Assembly: GCA_977020255.1 (NCBI GenBank)
Contig: CDROCS010000253.1
Coordinates: 1,178,001 to 1,242,000, forward strand
Reading direction: 5' to 3'
DNA from: Obrimoposthia wandeli
Taxonomy: Eukaryota
DNA length: 64,000 nucleotides
This document shows positions 5,238 to 10,467 of the stretch, in pieces. A program made the position numbers and the translations under genes. The notes under the pieces are model-generated. The model was not told the DNA's origin. It saw only the letters and a program-made list of their open reading frames with translations, and ran no database searches. Every line of letters begins with the position of its first letter. Position 1 is the first letter of the stretch.

Positions 5238-5454
5238 GTTTTTATTTTTAACTAATTGACTTTAATATTTTGATTCATATAAGTTACTCGTCTTAGGACT
5301 CATTTCACAGTAGAGTGGTTATTCAATTACCTGCCGTCCAAAATAATGCTGGTTAGGCCAGCTACGCATATAATTCTAACTTAGGTTTGAATTATATGCA
5401 GGTACGACAGTATGCTCCAGTTGCTATATATTTATCTTTCGAACACTTCATAAA

Positions 5455-5600
5455 TTCTACGTAAAAGTCATCATCATAAATATCTTAAAAGTTCGTATTA
5501 CTCTTTCCTTTTTACGGACTCTTTCTGACGCTGAAACCGACTACTTTGAGCCAATCAGTGAGTATCCAAAAATAACGTTCTAGGGGGCGTTATCCATTCT
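5455..5600 (-). pseudogene. Possible heavily decayed IS3-family transposase (OrfB C-terminal) fragment
   Basis: Across a 1-nt frameshift the minus strand reads DNAP-ERYFWILTDWLKVVGFS, resembling the IS3 motif WDNAPMERFFxxLKxEWxPxxGY. A later DIY...FY also resembles it. Multiple stops. Confidence 0.35.
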
Positions 5601-5718
5601 TACTGCAATATAGCGCTACAAGTATCGGAAGTATTTTTAATTAATTACAACAAAAAATCAAAAGTGACTACACTTATAAAATATTGTTGGTTTATATGGA
5701 TATAGTAAGGAAAATGGC

Positions 5719-6276
5719 ATGTTTGACATCTTGGAATATGATGATGCACAAGAAGAGATCAGGGAAATATATGATGATATTTTCAAATATTTAGGCAACG
5801 AAGGTTTGGTAGACTACTTCAAAGTCTTAGGTAAGTATAATAAAAATATACTCGCAGCCACATGGAATTTATTAAAAAACGTATTGATTAAAGGAGAGTT
5901 ACCTAGGTCACTAAAAGAGCTAGTGTTTGTTGCTGTATCCAATGAAAATAATTGTCGTTATTGTACCAATGTTCATAGTGCCACTTGTAAAATGATACAT
6001 GTCGATGAAGAGTCTTTGCAAAAAATATTAGCTAAAGCACAAGACTTAAACCCCAAAAGAGTCAAAATAGCGGTAGATTTTGCTATAAAAATGGCTGTCA
6101 ACGTTGATTCAATTACATCTCATGACCATAAAACTTTAATTGATGCTGGCCTGAGTAAAAGTGAAATATTTGAATTAATGTCATTGGTTAGTGTAGTTAA
6201 TTATTCCAATACACTCGCACAAGGTATGATGATTGCTGTAGATAAAAATATTCTTACTATTTTAGAGCGAGAATAG
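5719..6276 (+). CDS. AhpD/carboxymuconolactone decarboxylase-family peroxidase-related protein (CxxC-H)
   Basis: LPRSLKELVFVAVSNENNCRYCTNVH: AhpD core E-x11-CxxC-xxx-H pattern. Helical C-terminal repeat (L..AGLS..EIFE). Confidence 0.85.
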   Translation: MFDILEYDDAQEEIREIYDDIFKYLGNEGLVDYFKVLGKYNKNILAATWNLLKNVLIKGELPRSLKELVFVAVSNENNCRYCTNVHSATCKMIHVDEESLQKILAKAQDLNPKRVKIAVDFAIKMAVNVDSITSHDHKTLIDAGLSKSEIFELMSLVSVVNYSNTLAQGMMIAVDKNILTILERE

Positions 6277-6278
6277 GT

Positions 6279-7901
6279 ATGAATGGAGATGTAATTGATA
6301 CCTATCAATTGACCTCGCTCATTGAATTAACAAATGCTATGGCAGATGAGAGCATTCATTCTAAGGGAACTATTGAAGGTATAATAAGAAAATTTACTAA
6401 TAAGTTGGTTTGGACGTTAAATTTTGATCTTTGCTTTAAGCTCGATACCAGTAAACTTGGTCATGTAGAGTCTATCTATAATGGTGGGGGCTATGACGAA
6501 GATTTTGATAGTTTAAAAGAACATTCACTGTCGTCTTTTAAACAAAATAAAGAAATTATCATCGCAGATAAAAGTTTTAATTTAGCCTACAGCGTCTTAT
6601 TTAAAGATAAGCAAAGTTCACAAATTTTGATTTTTCTCAAGAATAAACAAAAATTTTCACCGCAATGTTTAATTATCTTAGAGTTGTATTGTTCAGCGGT
6701 TAAAAAAGTAATAGAAGCGAAGGAAAATGAAACAAAAAGAATCAAGTTGTTAAATGATAAACTTATTCTTGAACAGTCTAATAATCAGATTTCAAGATTT
6801 TTAGCTAACATGTCACATGAAATTAGAACTCCCATGAATGGGATGCTAGGGATGGTCACGTTACTTAGCGATACTAAGCTAAATCAGGAGCAAAGTGACA
6901 TGCTCGAAACGATCACATCATGTGGAAATGGGTTGTTAACGGTACTCAATGATATATTAGATTACAGTAAAATTGAGTCTGGTAAGCTTGAACTTGAGAG
7001 GGTCGATTTTGAGCTGGTAAAATGCCTTGACGAAATTATTTATTTATCCTCTTTCCAAGCAAATAAAAAAAACATCAACATTATTACTGAAATTGATCAA
7101 GTAACGCCTAAATATCTCATAGGGGATGTTATTCGTATTAAACAAATCTTGATAAATTTCATGAGTAATGCGGTTAAATTCACCCATGTTGGCGATATCA
7201 AACTATCGATCCACAGCGAGAAAGTCGATGCAATCAATTATAAAGTTAGCTTTAGTATAAAAGACACTGGCATAGGTATTAGTGAAGAAAATCAAAAGAA
7301 ATTATTTCAAGCATTTATTCAAGCAGATGCCTCTACCACGCGAAAATTTGGCGGAACTGGCTTGGGCCTAGCAATTTCAGCTAAGCTAGCTAAGGCAATG
7401 AATGGTCTTGTCAGCGTTAAAAGTACTGAAGGACTAGGTTCTACCTTTAGTGTTGATCTACCATTACAACAAGCAAAAAGTGAGCGAAACTCTGCACCAA
7501 ATCAGCATAAGTCGAAGGTGAATGAAAAGTTATCCAAAACGGCAATGAAGCACAAAATACTTATTGTTGAAGATAATCGGATTAATCAAAAAATAGCTGA
7601 AAAGATGTTGAACAAGTTAGGTTTGAGCTGTGATATTGCTGTAAACGGCCTAGACGCACTAAACGCTTTAGCAATTAATAATTATAGCTTTATTTTTATG
7701 GATATTCAGATGCCTGTTATGGATGGCATTAGCGCAACTAAAAAGATAGTCGAAAAATACGGCAATAAAAGACCGACTATAGTTGCCATGACCGCCAATG
7801 TTTTTCAGGAAGACAGGGATAAGTGCATAATTGCTGGGATGGATGACTTTATTGCAAAGCCTATCGATATAGCTGAATTAGTACGCGTCTTGTCTAAATA
7901 A
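6279..7901 (+). CDS. Cytoplasmic hybrid sensor histidine kinase/response regulator
   Basis: H-box FLANMSHEIRTPMNG, N-box QILINFMSNAVKFT, G1 DTGIGI, G2 GGTGLGLAIS, receiver ILIVEDN..NQ / FMDIQMPVMDG / FIAKP. No hydrophobic TM stretch in the ~170-aa N-terminus. Confidence 0.93.
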   Translation: MNGDVIDTYQLTSLIELTNAMADESIHSKGTIEGIIRKFTNKLVWTLNFDLCFKLDTSKLGHVESIYNGGGYDEDFDSLKEHSLSSFKQNKEIIIADKSFNLAYSVLFKDKQSSQILIFLKNKQKFSPQCLIILELYCSAVKKVIEAKENETKRIKLLNDKLILEQSNNQISRFLANMSHEIRTPMNGMLGMVTLLSDTKLNQEQSDMLETITSCGNGLLTVLNDILDYSKIESGKLELERVDFELVKCLDEIIYLSSFQANKKNINIITEIDQVTPKYLIGDVIRIKQILINFMSNAVKFTHVGDIKLSIHSEKVDAINYKVSFSIKDTGIGISEENQKKLFQAFIQADASTTRKFGGTGLGLAISAKLAKAMNGLVSVKSTEGLGSTFSVDLPLQQAKSERNSAPNQHKSKVNEKLSKTAMKHKILIVEDNRINQKIAEKMLNKLGLSCDIAVNGLDALNALAINNYSFIFMDIQMPVMDGISATKKIVEKYGNKRPTIVAMTANVFQEDRDKCIIAGMDDFIAKPIDIAELVRVLSK

Positions 7902-8157
7902 GGTAACGTTACAGACGTAATGAAGTAGTCGGTTCCTGTGACAATGCCGTGATTTCTGATCTCCATAGAGCCAGGCACATTGGGCATAACAATAGTTTTA
8001 TCTGAGGGTATTTGAGTCGATAACACCATTCATGTAAACGGCATCAGAACTACTGCCATCATCTTTAAAAGTAAAGTTAGCCAATTCTTCTTGATCATCA
8101 CTTCTATAACTTAATTCTAGAAAATACAAAATTAATAAAATATCTAATATTTGATTT
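7902..8157 (-). pseudogene. Deleted relic of a secreted/lipoprotein gene (COG3904-like periplasmic protein, by recall)
   Basis: Ordered blocks LLILYFLELSYRSDD (decayed lipobox-like), AVYMNGVIDSNT, KTIVMPNVPGSM, IRNHGIVT, GTDYFITSV, with a stop/frameshift and apparent internal deletions. Confidence 0.55.
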
Positions 8158-8159
8158 AA

Positions 8160-8765
8160 TTAGGTAAATAAACTTAAGAAGGGTTGGCCTTGGGCTGTCA
8201 TTAACCAGCCTAAAGCTGCAGTATTAATAACAACAGTAAACCAAAAAGTTACTCTAAATTCTGTCTTTTTAGATTTATGTCTAAGCATTTGTTGTGCAAT
8301 CGCTGCTCCCGGCCATCCACCAATTAATGCTAATAGGTGTAAAGTGCTTTCTTGTGTGCGCCATTCACCTCGCTGCGCTTTGGATTTATCAAAGGCATAG
8401 GCGATAAAAGTAATAATACTAACACCTAAGTAAATGAATAATATTTTTTGAGGCAGGTGACCAAAAAAGTAGGCAGCGGTTACCAAGGTAATAAATAGTA
8501 GAGATAAACAGATTGAGAACTTATTGATATTTTTAGCCTGTTTTTGCTGTATTTTTTCACCTGAAAATGTCGCTTGATCAGCGCAATATCTACCTTGGTT
8601 ATCTTTTATTACTGAAAAGGTAATAACATCATTAATTTTGGGTAAACGGTTTCGATTTACTAAAGCTGTTTTGTGTATAAAAATATGGTCACCACCGCCA
8701 TTAGGTGCAATAAAACCAAAAGCTTTGTCGGCATTCCATTTAATGAACTTTCCTTTTAAACGCAT
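8160..8765 (-). CDS. Cold-shock domain + DUF1294 membrane protein
   Basis: N-terminal GKFIKWNADKAFGFI..IFIH (CSD RNP motifs). C-terminal YAFDKSKAQRGEWRTQESTLHLLALIGGWPGA (DUF1294). Confidence 0.9.
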   Translation of the reverse strand: MRLKGKFIKWNADKAFGFIAPNGGGDHIFIHKTALVNRNRLPKINDVITFSVIKDNQGRYCADQATFSGEKIQQKQAKNINKFSICLSLLFITLVTAAYFFGHLPQKILFIYLGVSIITFIAYAFDKSKAQRGEWRTQESTLHLLALIGGWPGAAIAQQMLRHKSKKTEFRVTFWFTVVINTAALGWLMTAQGQPFLSLFT

Positions 8766-9144
8766 ACATACCCGTTATCATTCAAAGTGTAGGATTTCAG
8801 TGGGAATTACAATCACTTTAGACAAGGAAAATAATTTAAGCATAGTCATTCTATGGTTTGGTTAGTTTACGCGGTATAAAGTGATTGTAAACCCATCGAA
8901 GAAGCGCTTGAGCAACATCATTTCATCGTTCCTGTAATTTATAAGGGAATAGCCATTATTTCATCACAGCGCCTTGAATTGAAATTGCTCAAGCACTCTG
9001 AAACATACGCCTTGATTGGTAACGGGTATTACCTTCCTTGTTTTAGTGTGCAGTCATTATCTTACATGCCTAAGTAGTTAACTCAGGATTTTGCTGTAAA
9101 CGTCATCTTCGAAGTCTCTGAGTCATGTGCATAGGCATGCTATT

Positions 9145-10410
9145 TTATGAAATGAGACCTTTCAGCGCGTTAAATTCTGTACTTGTTCTATCTTGTTCAG
9201 CACAAATACTCAGTAAGTCGTCAATAAAGTGCTTTAACGCTCTGTGTTCTATTTTTTGTACTTTTTCTTGCTGTGCAGGCGTTAACATTTGATAGCTAGT
9301 TGCAGCGCCAAAGTCGCCAAAAATGATATTGCCTTGTGCATCAAATAAGGTGTTATGAGCGTATAAGTCACCGTGACATACTTGATTTTTATGCAAGTGC
9401 GCGAACACCTTTTCCATCTGGCTTACTATGTTCTTAATAAGCGTTATCGATAAGCTGAAACCTTGCGGGAAAGTGTCTCGGGTACAGCTATTAAAGCAAG
9501 GTGGTAAACCAAGGTTTTGGTAATTTTCAGGAATAAGGCTCATGATTAGCGCAAGGTAGTTACCTCCAGGGTGTAAGTCTTCATGTACTTGCGCTAATGA
9601 TTGTACCAAATTTGGGTGTTTTCCTACTTGTAAGCAAGCTTGCAATTCATCTTGTGGGTAACCATCACTGGTAACTTCACCTTTGAATACCTTTACTGCA
9701 ATATCATCAGGAAATTGTGATTGCGGTGAATTCCAGTGTGCTTTTGAAATAACCCCAGAAGCGCCTTGGCCGAGTACTCTTTCTAAAGTGTAGCTTGCCG
9801 ATGATACATCAGGTACTGGCATAACATGGAGGGTGTTTTTACTCTGGATTTTGGTGAAAGGGTTACCGGCAAAAGCTAACCATGCAAGTTTTGGTAAGCT
9901 TAGTAATTGCTCAGGGCATTCTGTTAGCTTATTTGCTGAAATACGCACTAGTTCAAGGTTATGGGCTTGTGCTAATGTTTGCGGTAACTCGGTCAAGCGG
10001 TTACCCGCCAAGGCTAATTTTTGTAATCTTGGTCGCTCACCTAAACTGTTTGGCAAGGTTTCAATTAAGTTATCGGTTAATATCAACCAACGCAATTGTG
10101 CCGGCAGTGACGCTTCAGCAACTTTTTTTATTTGGTTTGATTTAAAGCCAACCATCGTTAAGTTAGGTAACTGCCCCAACACTTCTGGCAAATGTTCAAA
10201 TTTATTTTGTGAAGCAAAAATAATCTTTAGCTTTGTCATTTGTGCTAACTCATCAGGTAGTGATGATAAGGCATTATTAGATAAGTCTAGGATCTCTAAA
10301 CTGTCAGCTAGCGTTAAAATTTCTAATGGGAATGTGCTTAGGTTTTCAGATAATTTTAATTGGCTAATGCCGGCGAGTTCGCCAGAGCGAAGTTGAGAAA
10401 GCGTATGCAA
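9145..10410 (-). CDS. Leucine-rich-repeat protein kinase family protein
   Basis: Repeated LxxLxLxxNxL units, then LGQGASG, VAVKVFKG, HGDLYAHN, GDFG. Likely start is TTG at 10410 (HTLSQLRSGEL); the track extends to 10455. Confidence 0.88.
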   Translation of the reverse strand: MHTLSQLRSGELAGISQLKLSENLSTFPLEILTLADSLEILDLSNNALSSLPDELAQMTKLKIIFASQNKFEHLPEVLGQLPNLTMVGFKSNQIKKVAEASLPAQLRWLILTDNLIETLPNSLGERPRLQKLALAGNRLTELPQTLAQAHNLELVRISANKLTECPEQLLSLPKLAWLAFAGNPFTKIQSKNTLHVMPVPDVSSASYTLERVLGQGASGVISKAHWNSPQSQFPDDIAVKVFKGEVTSDGYPQDELQACLQVGKHPNLVQSLAQVHEDLHPGGNYLALIMSLIPENYQNLGLPPCFNSCTRDTFPQGFSLSITLIKNIVSQMEKVFAHLHKNQVCHGDLYAHNTLFDAQGNIIFGDFGAATSYQMLTPAQQEKVQKIEHRALKHFIDDLLSICAEQDRTSTEFNALKGLIS

Positions 10411-10467
10411 AATAAAGCGTCCGTAGAAGTCATTAAAAATGGCGCTAGTGTACAAGATCTTCTTCGT

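What the first reader, a model, noticed from the sequence alone, without database searches (positions are those of the whole stretch)
5719..7901. AhpD-like CxxC protein coupled to a membrane-less hybrid histidine kinase: candidate thiol/peroxide-sensing signalling module
Seen: a two-gene unit with only 2 bp between stop and start. Gene 1 has an intact AhpD core (KELV..AVS..NNCRYC...H). Gene 2 is a full HisKA-HATPase-REC hybrid with no TM helix and an unrecognised ~170-aa N-terminus. The unit looks more AT-rich than the backbone by eye and is flanked by relics (possible IS3 left, lipoprotein right). Established: AhpD-fold proteins are thiol peroxidases/reductases, and soluble kinases are often controlled in trans by a co-transcribed stand-alone sensor (H-NOX/HnoK, NosP). 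Inference: the AhpD-like protein could be a stand-alone redox sensor for the kinase, an arrangement I do not recognise as characterised.
Basis: partly seen in the sequence, partly recalled or inferred. Interest (0 to 1): 0.75.

Follow-up and report, generated by a model that had tools for sequence, protein, structure and literature searches.

The report
AhpD-like protein paired with GAF kinase
A small thiol-redox (AhpD-type) protein is encoded directly in front of, and translationally coupled to, a soluble GAF-domain hybrid histidine kinase. The same pairing recurs in very distant bacteria, which suggests an undescribed two-protein cytoplasmic sensor.

Summary
The core observation holds. ORF 5719-6276 is a 185-aa CMD/AhpD-fold protein with an intact E-x11-CxxC-xxx-H centre. 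Two bases later, ORF 6279-7901 is a 540-aa soluble HisKA-HATPase-REC hybrid kinase. The pair is the most AT-rich 2.2 kb of the window. The IS3 and lipoprotein relics found no support.

The pairing is strongly conserved. All 12 species-representative genomes with this CMD clade (Colwellia, Moritella, Pseudoalteromonas) carry the kinase directly downstream. So do all 26 metagenome contigs with room downstream. Gaps are -8, -4 or +2 bp and the flanks differ.

Of 9 distant CMD relatives sampled (23-36% identity), 8 sit directly upstream of a GAF-type signalling protein or a kinase with an equivalent N-terminus. Outputs vary (kinases, hybrid kinases, a nucleotide cyclase). The first GAF domain carries a shared W-x2-[DN]-[FYL]-[DNK]-x-C signature.

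So the constant link is CMD to GAF input domain. I found no paper describing it.

Best reading (0.45): the AhpD-like protein is a dedicated thiol-based partner sensor of the GAF kinase. Main rival (0.28): it is the co-expressed effector enzyme, as with ECF41 sigma factors. No interaction or activity was tested.

The parts
5616..5718 (+). Upstream region of the module with the ribosome-binding site (AAGGA about 8 nt before the ATG); probable own promoter or operator region
   Evidence: 76-82% DNA identity to the regions upstream of the CMD gene in L007, L009 and L011, although the genes further upstream differ. No strong sigma-70 consensus was found.
5719..6276 (+). CMD/AhpD-fold protein, 185 aa, cytoplasmic
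   Evidence: Pfam CMD and TIGR00778 above cutoff; TIGR01926 77.7 bits, just below its 81.8 cutoff. AF2 model pLDDT 96.9, all-alpha; Foldseek TM 0.80-0.86 to 3c1l, 2prr, 6k40 and 6e8l.
5917..5976 (+). Redox centre E67-x11-C79-x-x-C82-x-x-x-H86 (C90 follows at 5986-5988)
   Evidence: Invariant in 25 clade members. CxxCxxxH in 99 of 131 family representatives and C82 in 124 of 131. C79 sits at the N-terminus of helix 80-92.
6279..7901 (+). Soluble hybrid histidine kinase, 540 aa: GAF-like, signalling helix, HisKA, HATPase_c, REC; no Hpt
6291..6668 (+). Divergent GAF-like sensor domain (residues ~5-130); the signalling helix 128-179 continues into HisKA
6411..6434 (+). Signature W45-T-L-N-F-D-L-C52 on strand beta-1 of the GAF-like domain
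   Evidence: W45 is invariant and C52 present in 8 of 11 partner proteins, including cyanobacterial and multi-GAF partners at 12-16% identity. C52 is in 16 of 16 clade kinases. The relaxed motif occurs 50 times in 1.06 M six-frame residues and only once in the 64-kb window, at this site; all ten sequence variants are those of CMD-adjacent partners.
6792..6983 (+). HisKA dimerisation/phosphoacceptor domain; H180 at 6816-6818
   Evidence: Pfam 76.3 bits; HEIRTP H-box
7122..7469 (+). HATPase_c catalytic domain
   Evidence: Pfam 94.7 bits
7557..7889 (+). Receiver domain; phospho-acceptor D475 at 7701-7703
   Evidence: Pfam 84.1 bits; the FMDIQMP context was read from the translation

Best explanation
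The two genes form a self-contained, translationally coupled cytoplasmic sensor module. The AhpD-fold protein uses its E-CxxC-H thiol centre to react with an oxidant or thiol-reactive compound, such as a peroxide or another electrophile. It passes that state to the N-terminal GAF-like domain of the kinase by direct contact, possibly by thiol-disulfide exchange with the conserved GAF cysteine C52. The GAF domain then changes autophosphorylation at H180 through the signalling helix. The phosphoryl group moves to D475 of the fused receiver and on to an Hpt protein and response regulator encoded elsewhere. Shown here: gene anatomy, intact catalytic motifs, the GAF fold, conservation of the pair and of its coupling, co-transfer as a unit, and the link to a specific GAF subtype whatever the output domain. 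Inferred: physical interaction, direction of signal flow, nature of the signal, and the role of C52.
For: Within the clade, the kinase follows the CMD gene in 12 of 12 species-representative genomes and in 26 of 26 metagenome contigs with room downstream. Gaps are only -8, -4 or +2 bp. Flanking genes differ in every lineage. Colwellia sp. TT2012 has the window's neighbours (HI0933-like 89%, LRR kinase 80%) but a Moritella-type module (CMD 86%, GAF 81%, core 83% to Moritella) in the opposite orientation. Both genes therefore move together. In 1.84 billion representatives the clade is one isolated cluster, and the next relative is only 36% identical. Yet of 9 distant relatives sampled, 8 sit just upstream of a GAF-type signalling protein or a kinase with an equivalent N-terminus: three HisKA kinases whose N-termini get no or only a weak Pfam GAF hit, a GAF-GAF kinase followed by an OmpR regulator, a tandem CMD-CMD followed by a GAF protein, a GAF class III cyclase, a GAFx4 hybrid kinase, and one truncated partner carrying the motif. 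The partners' first GAF domain shares a W...C signature found nowhere else in the fetched DNA. The CMD protein is more conserved than the kinase (mean identity 69% against 50% for GAF and 57% for the core). A cyanobacterial variant lacking both cysteines (SxxAxxxH) keeps its GAF-cyclase partner with a 4-bp overlap. That fits a regulatory partner better than a detoxifying enzyme. Precedents: accessory redox sensors of kinases (HbpS-SenS-SenR, PMC4991794) and a GAF domain that senses H2O2 (PexR, PMC12754779). From my own knowledge, Sestrin2, an AhpD-fold protein that appeared as a weak Foldseek match (E about 0.1, TM 0.61), works as a ligand sensor in signalling.
Against: No interaction, co-expression or activity data exist. 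No multimer prediction was possible and no RNA run holds the locus. C52 is V, L or shifted in 3 of 11 partners, and it sits at a position that is often a small residue in GAF strand beta-1 (my recollection of the Pfam GAF_2 consensus, not tested). It may therefore be structural. The Cys-less CMD variant shows that thiol exchange cannot be the universal mechanism. CxxC CMD genes linked to ECF41 sigma factors are regulated targets, not sensors (PMC3426412). Two CMD relatives (Carboxydothermus; L067) have no signalling neighbour. The distant samples share ancestry, so they are not fully independent.
Confidence: 0.45

Rival explanations
1. Effector-in-operon. The GAF domain alone senses the signal. 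The CMD protein is the co-expressed defence or feedback enzyme (peroxidase, disulfide reductase or dehalogenase-like) that removes the signal compound. The operon would be autoregulated through the phosphorelay, as with CMD genes co-transcribed with ECF41 sigma factors.
For: In ECF41 systems, CxxC CMD genes are often directly upstream of and overlapping the regulator gene, and they are its only detectable targets (PMC3426412). In L030 the order CMD - GAF kinase - OmpR regulator looks like a classical autoregulated operon. The catalytic E-CxxC-H centre is fully intact, as expected for an enzyme. AhpD-fold enzymes acting on small molecules exist, for example the marine debrominase Bmp8, Foldseek TM 0.81.
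Against: The window's module encodes no DNA-binding output. One partner is a cyclase, so autoregulation would be indirect. A Cys-less CMD variant keeps its partner. The link tracks one particular GAF subtype across changing outputs. The CMD protein is more conserved than the kinase.
Confidence: 0.28
2. Maintenance or maturation factor. The CMD protein acts as a thioredoxin-like reductase, as AhpD does for AhpC. It would keep or reset the GAF cysteine (or a cofactor bound there) in the signalling-competent state, so the GAF domain is the primary sensor and the CMD protein sets its recovery.
Against: The same missing-cysteine exceptions apply as above. No reductant system for the CMD protein is encoded nearby in the window. 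No cofactor-binding residues are evident: the invariant polar residues of the GAF-like domain are only Q10, S13, E16, T18, K42, C52, N90 and Y104.
Confidence: 0.12
3. The partnership is real, but the signal is a small organic ligand, such as a halogenated or other electrophilic marine metabolite, bound or converted by the AhpD-fold protein. It would not be peroxide or general thiol redox stress.
For: The fold matches the Bmp8 debrominase of marine bacteria. The module occurs in the Pseudoalteromonas phenolica group. Cys-less variants keep H86 and E67, which suggests a retained pocket. An AurF-like oxygenase sits next to one distant module.
Against: Sequence identity to Bmp8 is only 17-18%. No biosynthetic or halogenase genes flank the module in any locus examined.
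Confidence: 0.1
4. The adjacency has no functional meaning: two unrelated genes are carried together.
For: Only that no experiment links them.
Against: The pairing, gene order, strand and start-stop overlap persist at 23-36% CMD identity, across very different partner architectures and in several different genomic contexts. Signalling proteins with GAF domains are a small fraction of genes.
Confidence: 0.03

Closest known systems
Stand-alone sensor plus soluble kinase operons (H-NOX/HnoK, NosP/NahK)
   Same: A small cytoplasmic sensor protein is encoded directly next to, and co-oriented with, a soluble (often hybrid) histidine kinase that lacks a membrane sensor. The pairing is conserved across genera.
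   Different: The partner here is an AhpD/CMD fold with a CxxC centre, not a haem H-NOX or FIST/NosP domain. The kinase scores 158 bits against a cutoff of 400 for the NahK/ErcS-type model. The link follows the GAF input domain and extends to a cyclase.
HbpS-SenS-SenR three-component redox system of streptomycetes (PMC4991794)
   Same: An accessory protein that undergoes redox-dependent modification modulates a sensor kinase.
   Different: HbpS is a secreted octameric haem/iron-binding protein of another fold that acts on a membrane kinase from outside. This module is entirely cytoplasmic and thiol-based.
ECF41 sigma factors with co-transcribed CxxC CMD genes (PMC3426412)
   Same: A CxxC CMD gene is conserved next to, often upstream of and overlapping, a signal-transduction gene.
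   Different: The regulator there is an ECF sigma factor with a fused regulatory domain, and the CMD gene is its target. Here the partner is a GAF kinase or cyclase with no sigma factor. That case is the basis of the main rival explanation.
AhpD of Mycobacterium tuberculosis and 'peroxidase-related' CMD proteins (3c1l, 2prr, 6k40, 6e8l)
   Same: Same fold and the same E-x11-CxxC-x3-H centre.
   Different: No ahpC neighbour in the window. The AhpD subfamily model TIGR00777 scores 22 bits against a cutoff of 192, and TIGR01926 falls just below its cutoff. The clade is isolated at 36% identity or less from all other representatives.
PexR and NorR GAF-domain sensors of H2O2 and NO (PMC12754779)
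   Same: An N-terminal GAF domain with a signalling helix senses an oxidant and controls the downstream module.
   Different: Those GAF domains use a His/Asp/Cys metal pocket and need no partner protein. The GAF-like domain here has no such cluster among its invariant residues and always comes with a CMD gene.
Peroxidase-based redox relays (Orp1/Gpx3-Yap1) and Sestrin2 (own knowledge)
   Same: In the relays, a thiol peroxidase passes oxidation to a signalling protein. In Sestrin2, an AhpD-fold protein acts as a sensor by protein-protein interaction. Sestrin2 appeared among the fold matches at TM 0.61, E about 0.1.
   Different: These are eukaryotic systems with unrelated targets. A relay mechanism is only hypothesised here.

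Membership tests
CMD / AhpD-core superfamily (PF02627, TIGR00778) | Profile match above the curated cutoff | tested here: met
   PF02627 44.7 bits against 23; TIGR00778 36.8 bits against 27.8
CMD / AhpD-core superfamily (PF02627, TIGR00778) | E-x11-C-x2-C-x3-H proton-relay/thiol motif | tested here: met
   E67, C79, C82 and H86 are invariant in the clade
CMD / AhpD-core superfamily (PF02627, TIGR00778) | All-alpha AhpD fold | tested here: met
   AF2 pLDDT 96.9; TM 0.80-0.86 to 3c1l, 2prr, 6k40 and 6e8l
Bona fide AhpD (TIGR00777; AhpC reductase) | Subfamily profile above cutoff and an ahpC partner gene | tested here: not met
   22.2 bits against cutoff 191.95. The window's neighbours are ferritin, an HI0933-like flavoprotein and CSD-DUF1294, with no peroxiredoxin.
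TIGR01926 'peroxidase-related enzyme' subfamily | Profile score at or above 81.8 bits | tested here: not met
   77.7 bits, full-length alignment 2-170, borderline
Thiol peroxidase / disulfide reductase activity | Catalytic turnover with peroxide or disulfide substrates | not testable with these tools
   Only the motif and fold are shown
HisKA-type hybrid histidine kinase | HisKA with H-box His, HATPase_c, and a fused REC with the acceptor Asp | tested here: met
   Pfam 76.3, 94.7 and 84.1 bits; H180 and D475
HisKA-type hybrid histidine kinase | Hpt domain for the third phosphotransfer step | tested here: not met
   No Hpt hit in the protein or in the adjacent genes. It must be encoded elsewhere.
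GAF domain | Sequence match to the Pfam GAF models | tested here: not met
   No hit in residues 1-170 at E <= 0.01
GAF domain | GAF fold: helices packed on a beta-sheet (five strands in this model), with a C-terminal signalling helix | tested here: met
GAF domain | Homology to the canonical GAF domains of other CMD-linked partners | tested here: inconclusive
   Shared W...C signature and alignment, but profile comparison is weak (E 7e-4, 0.12 and 0.64)
Stand-alone sensor + soluble kinase pairs (H-NOX/HnoK, NosP/NahK) | Conserved adjacent, co-oriented sensor and kinase genes | tested here: met
   38 of 38 informative clade loci and 8 of 9 distant samples
Stand-alone sensor + soluble kinase pairs (H-NOX/HnoK, NosP/NahK) | Sensor is an H-NOX or FIST/NosP domain; kinase is NahK/ErcS type | tested here: not met
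   The sensor is a CMD protein. NF041832 scores 158.5 bits against a cutoff of 400.
Stand-alone sensor + soluble kinase pairs (H-NOX/HnoK, NosP/NahK) | Sensor binds the kinase and controls its autophosphorylation | not testable with these tools
   No multimer prediction or biochemistry was available
ECF41-COE modules | ECF41 sigma factor gene next to the CMD gene | tested here: not met
   No sigma factor in the window's neighbourhood or in the related loci whose flanking genes were listed

The most novel reading that the evidence does not exclude
A whole branch of AhpD-fold CxxC proteins may not be detoxifying enzymes. They may be the input half of a widespread two-protein sensor: a bacterial peroxidase-type redox relay that hands oxidising equivalents (or a ligand-bound state) to a dedicated GAF subtype marked by a W...C strand motif. 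This would control phosphorelays and cyclic-nucleotide synthesis in Gammaproteobacteria, Cyanobacteria and other lineages.
Probability: 0.22. Interest if true: 0.85.

Novelty: new variant of a known kind. Interest (0 to 1): 0.66.

Why it matters
How soluble histidine kinases and GAF domains perceive signals is unknown for most family members, and thousands of 'peroxidase-related' CMD proteins have no assigned role. A conserved, translationally coupled CMD-GAF pair gives both a testable function. It would add an AhpD-fold protein to the short list of stand-alone partner sensors (H-NOX, NosP, HbpS). If the cysteines communicate, it would be a bacterial counterpart of eukaryotic peroxidase-transcription-factor relays. 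The module is small (2.3 kb), soluble and self-contained, so it is easy to reconstitute.

Tried and rejected
1. IS3 and lipoprotein relics: six-frame pieces of both intergenic regions gave no Pfam family, and blastn found no repeat copies elsewhere in the window. Rejected.
2. A membrane or secreted location: no hydrophobic segment in either protein.
3. A metal-centre GAF like PexR or NorR: no His/Asp cluster among the invariant residues.
4. Widening the neighbourhood census with divergent CMD alignments on metagenome contigs failed twice, because no stretch was conserved enough. I used the clade alignment instead and nine single look-ups.
5. Profile comparison of the GAF-like alignment with distant partner N-termini was weak. 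The link rests on the shared motif and on the MAFFT alignment.
6. Natural CMD-GAF or CMD-kinase fusions: none among the top 150 representatives. One CMD-REC protein, P0124, looks truncated.
7. Transcription evidence: all 13 runs holding the locus are kept as contigs and none is on record as RNA, so I did not run read laying.
9. I did not use the third big word search because the open questions did not depend on it.
10. Earlier notes of the scan gave nothing on this locus.
No stretches of N and nothing I took for human sequence were met.
Full report
**What is there**

The window carries two co-oriented ORFs. The first, 5719-6276, encodes 185 aa. The second, 6279-7901, encodes 540 aa. Only GT lies between the TAG stop and the ATG start.

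Gene 1 matches Pfam CMD (44.7 bits, cutoff 23) and the AhpD core domain TIGR00778 (36.8 bits, cutoff 27.8). It falls just short of the 'peroxidase-related enzyme' subfamily TIGR01926 (77.7 against 81.8). It is far below true AhpD, TIGR00777 (22 against 192).

Its redox centre E67-x11-C79-x2-C82-x3-H86, plus C90, is invariant in 25 clade members. An AlphaFold model built on 51 relatives is very confident (pLDDT 96.9) and all-helical, with C79 at the N-terminus of a helix. It superposes on structural-genomics 'peroxidase-related' proteins and on the AhpD proteins of Deinococcus and Streptococcus pneumoniae at TM 0.80-0.86. It also superposes on the marine debrominase Bmp8 (TM 0.81) and, more weakly, on Sestrin2 (TM 0.61) (sequence-level PDB matches).

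Gene 2 has these parts:
- HisKA at 172-235, with H180 in HEIRTP.
- HATPase_c at 282-397.
- A receiver at 427-537, with D475.
- No Hpt domain.
- No hydrophobic segment (maximum 19-residue Kyte-Doolittle mean 1.24).

The unit has GC 0.338 against a window mean of 0.383 (z = -2.8) and is the most AT-rich 2.2 kb of the 64 kb. The proposed IS3 and lipoprotein relics found no support. The ~100 bp before gene 1 are conserved with related modules and belong to the unit.

**The 'unrecognised' N-terminus is a GAF-like domain**

An AlphaFold model of residues 1-180, built on 19 sequences, has pLDDT 82.6. It shows two helices, a five-stranded sheet with a short helix, and a long helix (128-179) running into HisKA.
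- Foldseek's top PDB hits are almost all GAF domains, at modest E-values (3e-3 and weaker).
- ESM Atlas models of GAF kinases and cyclases match at TM 0.74-0.76.
- The Pfam GAF models do not match, so this is a divergent member.

**Conservation of the pair within its clade**

A word-based search found 46 CMD homologues at 56-95% identity, all from marine sources.

A scan of one genome per species (185,579 species) found 12 loci: Colwellia, Moritella, the Pseudoalteromonas phenolica group and an Alteromonadaceae MAG. One contig is labelled Polaribacter and is probably mis-binned. Every one of these loci has the kinase, with the same N-terminal domain, directly downstream. The gap is -8, -4 or +2 bp in all 15 loci measured.

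A metagenome scan added 29 clade loci. All 26 with room downstream carry the kinase, and the other three end within 42 nt of the CMD stop.

Flanking genes differ completely between lineages.

Colwellia sp. TT2012 shares the window's neighbours (HI0933-like protein 89%, LRR kinase 80% identical). It nevertheless holds a Moritella-type module there, in the opposite orientation. Its CMD, GAF and core parts are 86%, 81% and 83% identical to Moritella, against 64%, 43% and 55% to the window. The two genes therefore travel as one unit.

The module's GC (0.33-0.38) is below its flanks in all 14 loci measured, most clearly in Moritella (0.35 against 0.44). The CMD protein is the more conserved partner, with mean pairwise identity 69% against 50% for the GAF-like part and 57% for the kinase core.

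**Beyond the clade**

An exhaustive HMMER search of 1.84 billion representatives collapses the clade into one cluster. Identity then drops to 36% or less, with 1,034 hits at E <= 0.001. I looked up the genomic context of nine of these distant relatives:

| CMD relative | Locus | Gene directly downstream |
|---|---|---|
| P0081 | L021 | 704-aa HisKA kinase, unassigned N-terminus |
| P0084 | L023 | 583-aa hybrid kinase, unassigned N-terminus |
| P0087 | L026 | 744-aa kinase with PAS and a weak GAF signal |
| P0099 | L030 | GAF-GAF-HisKA-HATPase with a 4-bp overlap, then an OmpR-type regulator |
| P0119 | L031/L032 | a second CMD gene, then a GAF protein |
| P0131 (cyanobacterial; both cysteines replaced, SxxAxxxH) | L034 | GAF class III cyclase with a 4-bp overlap |
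| P0246 | L035 | GAFx4-HisKA-HATPase-RECx2 protein with a 4-bp overlap |
| P0092 | L029 | truncated protein that carries the partner motif |
| P0234 (Carboxydothermus) | L033 | no signalling neighbour |

A 26%-identical double-CMD protein (L067) sits with an ABC transporter and has no signalling neighbour.

So 8 of 9 distant relatives keep a GAF-type partner or a kinase with an equivalent N-terminus while the output domain changes. The association has limits.

The samples share ancestry and are not statistically independent. But gene order, strand and start-stop overlap persist at 23-36% identity, which argues for selection on the pairing.

**A signature in the partner's first GAF domain**

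I aligned the N-termini of the 11 partners. They share an invariant Trp (W45 in the window's kinase). Eight of the 11 have a Cys eight residues later (C52). The local pattern is W-x2-[DN]-[FYL]-[DNK]-x-C on the first strand.

A relaxed form of this motif occurs 50 times in 1.06 million six-frame residues of all fetched DNA. It occurs only once in the 64-kb window, at 6411-6434 in the kinase. All ten sequence variants are those seen in the CMD-adjacent partners. In the stricter scan, whose hit positions I listed, all six hits lie at the N-terminus of the CMD-adjacent partner. None lies in the second to fourth GAF domains of the same proteins or in the GAF-GGDEF-EAL protein of L007.

C52 is present in 16 of 16 clade kinases. 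Profile-profile comparison of the distant N-termini is weak (E 7e-4, 0.12 and 0.64). Common descent of these GAF domains is therefore likely but not proven.

**How it most likely works**

The constant elements are a CxxC AhpD-fold protein and a particular N-terminal GAF subtype, made from one coupled message. My best reading (0.45) is a two-protein cytoplasmic sensor:
1. The CMD protein reacts with an oxidant or thiol-reactive compound.
2. It conveys this to the GAF domain by contact, perhaps through C52.
3. The signalling helix sets autophosphorylation at H180.
4. The phosphoryl group goes to D475 and then to an unlinked Hpt protein and regulator.

The interaction, the direction of signal flow and the signal itself are inferred.

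The Cys-less but still partnered cyanobacterial variant argues for a regulatory partner rather than a detoxifying enzyme. It also shows that thiol exchange cannot be universal.

The main rival (0.28) is that the CMD protein is the co-expressed effector or feedback enzyme. This is exactly what was shown for CxxC CMD genes that sit upstream of, and overlap, ECF41 sigma factor genes (PMC3426412). The CMD - kinase - regulator order in L030 fits that picture.

Further rivals:
- A reductase that resets the GAF cysteine (0.12).
- A small-molecule rather than peroxide signal (0.10). The Bmp8 fold match and the hosts' marine chemistry prompt this idea.
- Meaningless adjacency (0.03).

**Comparison with what is known**

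Functionally it resembles stand-alone sensor plus soluble kinase operons (H-NOX/HnoK, NosP/NahK) and the HbpS-SenS-SenR redox system (PMC4991794). It fails their defining features, because the sensor fold differs and the NahK-type model scores 158 against a cutoff of 400.

GAF domains that sense H2O2 on their own exist (PexR, PMC12754779), but they use a metal pocket that is absent here.

Ten full-text searches found no paper linking a CMD/AhpD protein to a histidine kinase or a GAF domain. The library lacks most subscription journals, so this is not proof of absence.

**Limits**

- No multimer prediction was possible.
- No RNA data exist for this locus.
- Two scans with divergent alignments failed.
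- The census of distant relatives covers nine look-ups, not the whole family.

**Verdict**

The core observation is confirmed, apart from the relics. I rate it a new variant of a known kind (accessory-sensor kinase systems) with interest 0.66.

Noticed in passing
window 9145-10455 (-): A 436-aa protein combining leucine-rich repeats (LRR_8, 68.9 bits) with a eukaryote-type Ser/Thr protein kinase domain (Pkinase, 54.2 bits). An 80%-identical copy lies near the module in Colwellia sp. TT2012 (L012). This is an unusual architecture for a bacterium.
   Followed up: partly
window 5238-10455 compared with L012: The region downstream of the HI0933-like gene is variable between two close relatives. 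The window has its own module plus a CSD-DUF1294 gene. TT2012 has a Moritella-type module in the opposite orientation plus three other ORFs (165, 295 and 667 aa) and no CSD-DUF1294. This is a possible exchange hot spot, with no integrase seen.
   Followed up: partly
window 8160-8765 (-): A cold-shock domain fused to a DUF1294 membrane domain (201 aa), convergent with the kinase gene.
   Followed up: no
window 5348-5399: A 34-nt near-palindrome (5366-5399, 88% self-complementary) lies next to a terminator-like hairpin called on the minus strand (5362-5348). Both are in the spacer after the HI0933-like gene and outside the conserved module upstream region.
   Followed up: no
P0124 (representative protein, 226 aa): A partial CMD domain (41% identical to residues 53-154 of the window protein) fused to a receiver domain. 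It is either a real CMD-REC fusion or a gene-call artefact. If real, it is another link between this CMD branch and phosphorelays.
   Followed up: no
L021 701-3926; L023 268-686: Distant CMD-kinase modules have redox-flavoured neighbours. L021 has an AurF-like di-iron oxygenase and a REC-PAS-GGDEF-EAL protein. L023 has a Thioredoxin_3 protein just upstream.
   Followed up: no
L010 (contig JBLIBL010000031.1): A contig labelled as a Polaribacter (Bacteroidota) MAG carries a module 81% (CMD) and 78% (kinase) identical to the window's Colwellia-type module. It is probably a mis-binned gammaproteobacterial contig.
   Followed up: no
L050 815-2424; L059 4570-5706: In two metagenome contigs the kinase aligns in two overlapping pieces (L050) or only up to residue 382 (L059). 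These may be frameshifts, assembly errors or decaying copies.
   Followed up: no
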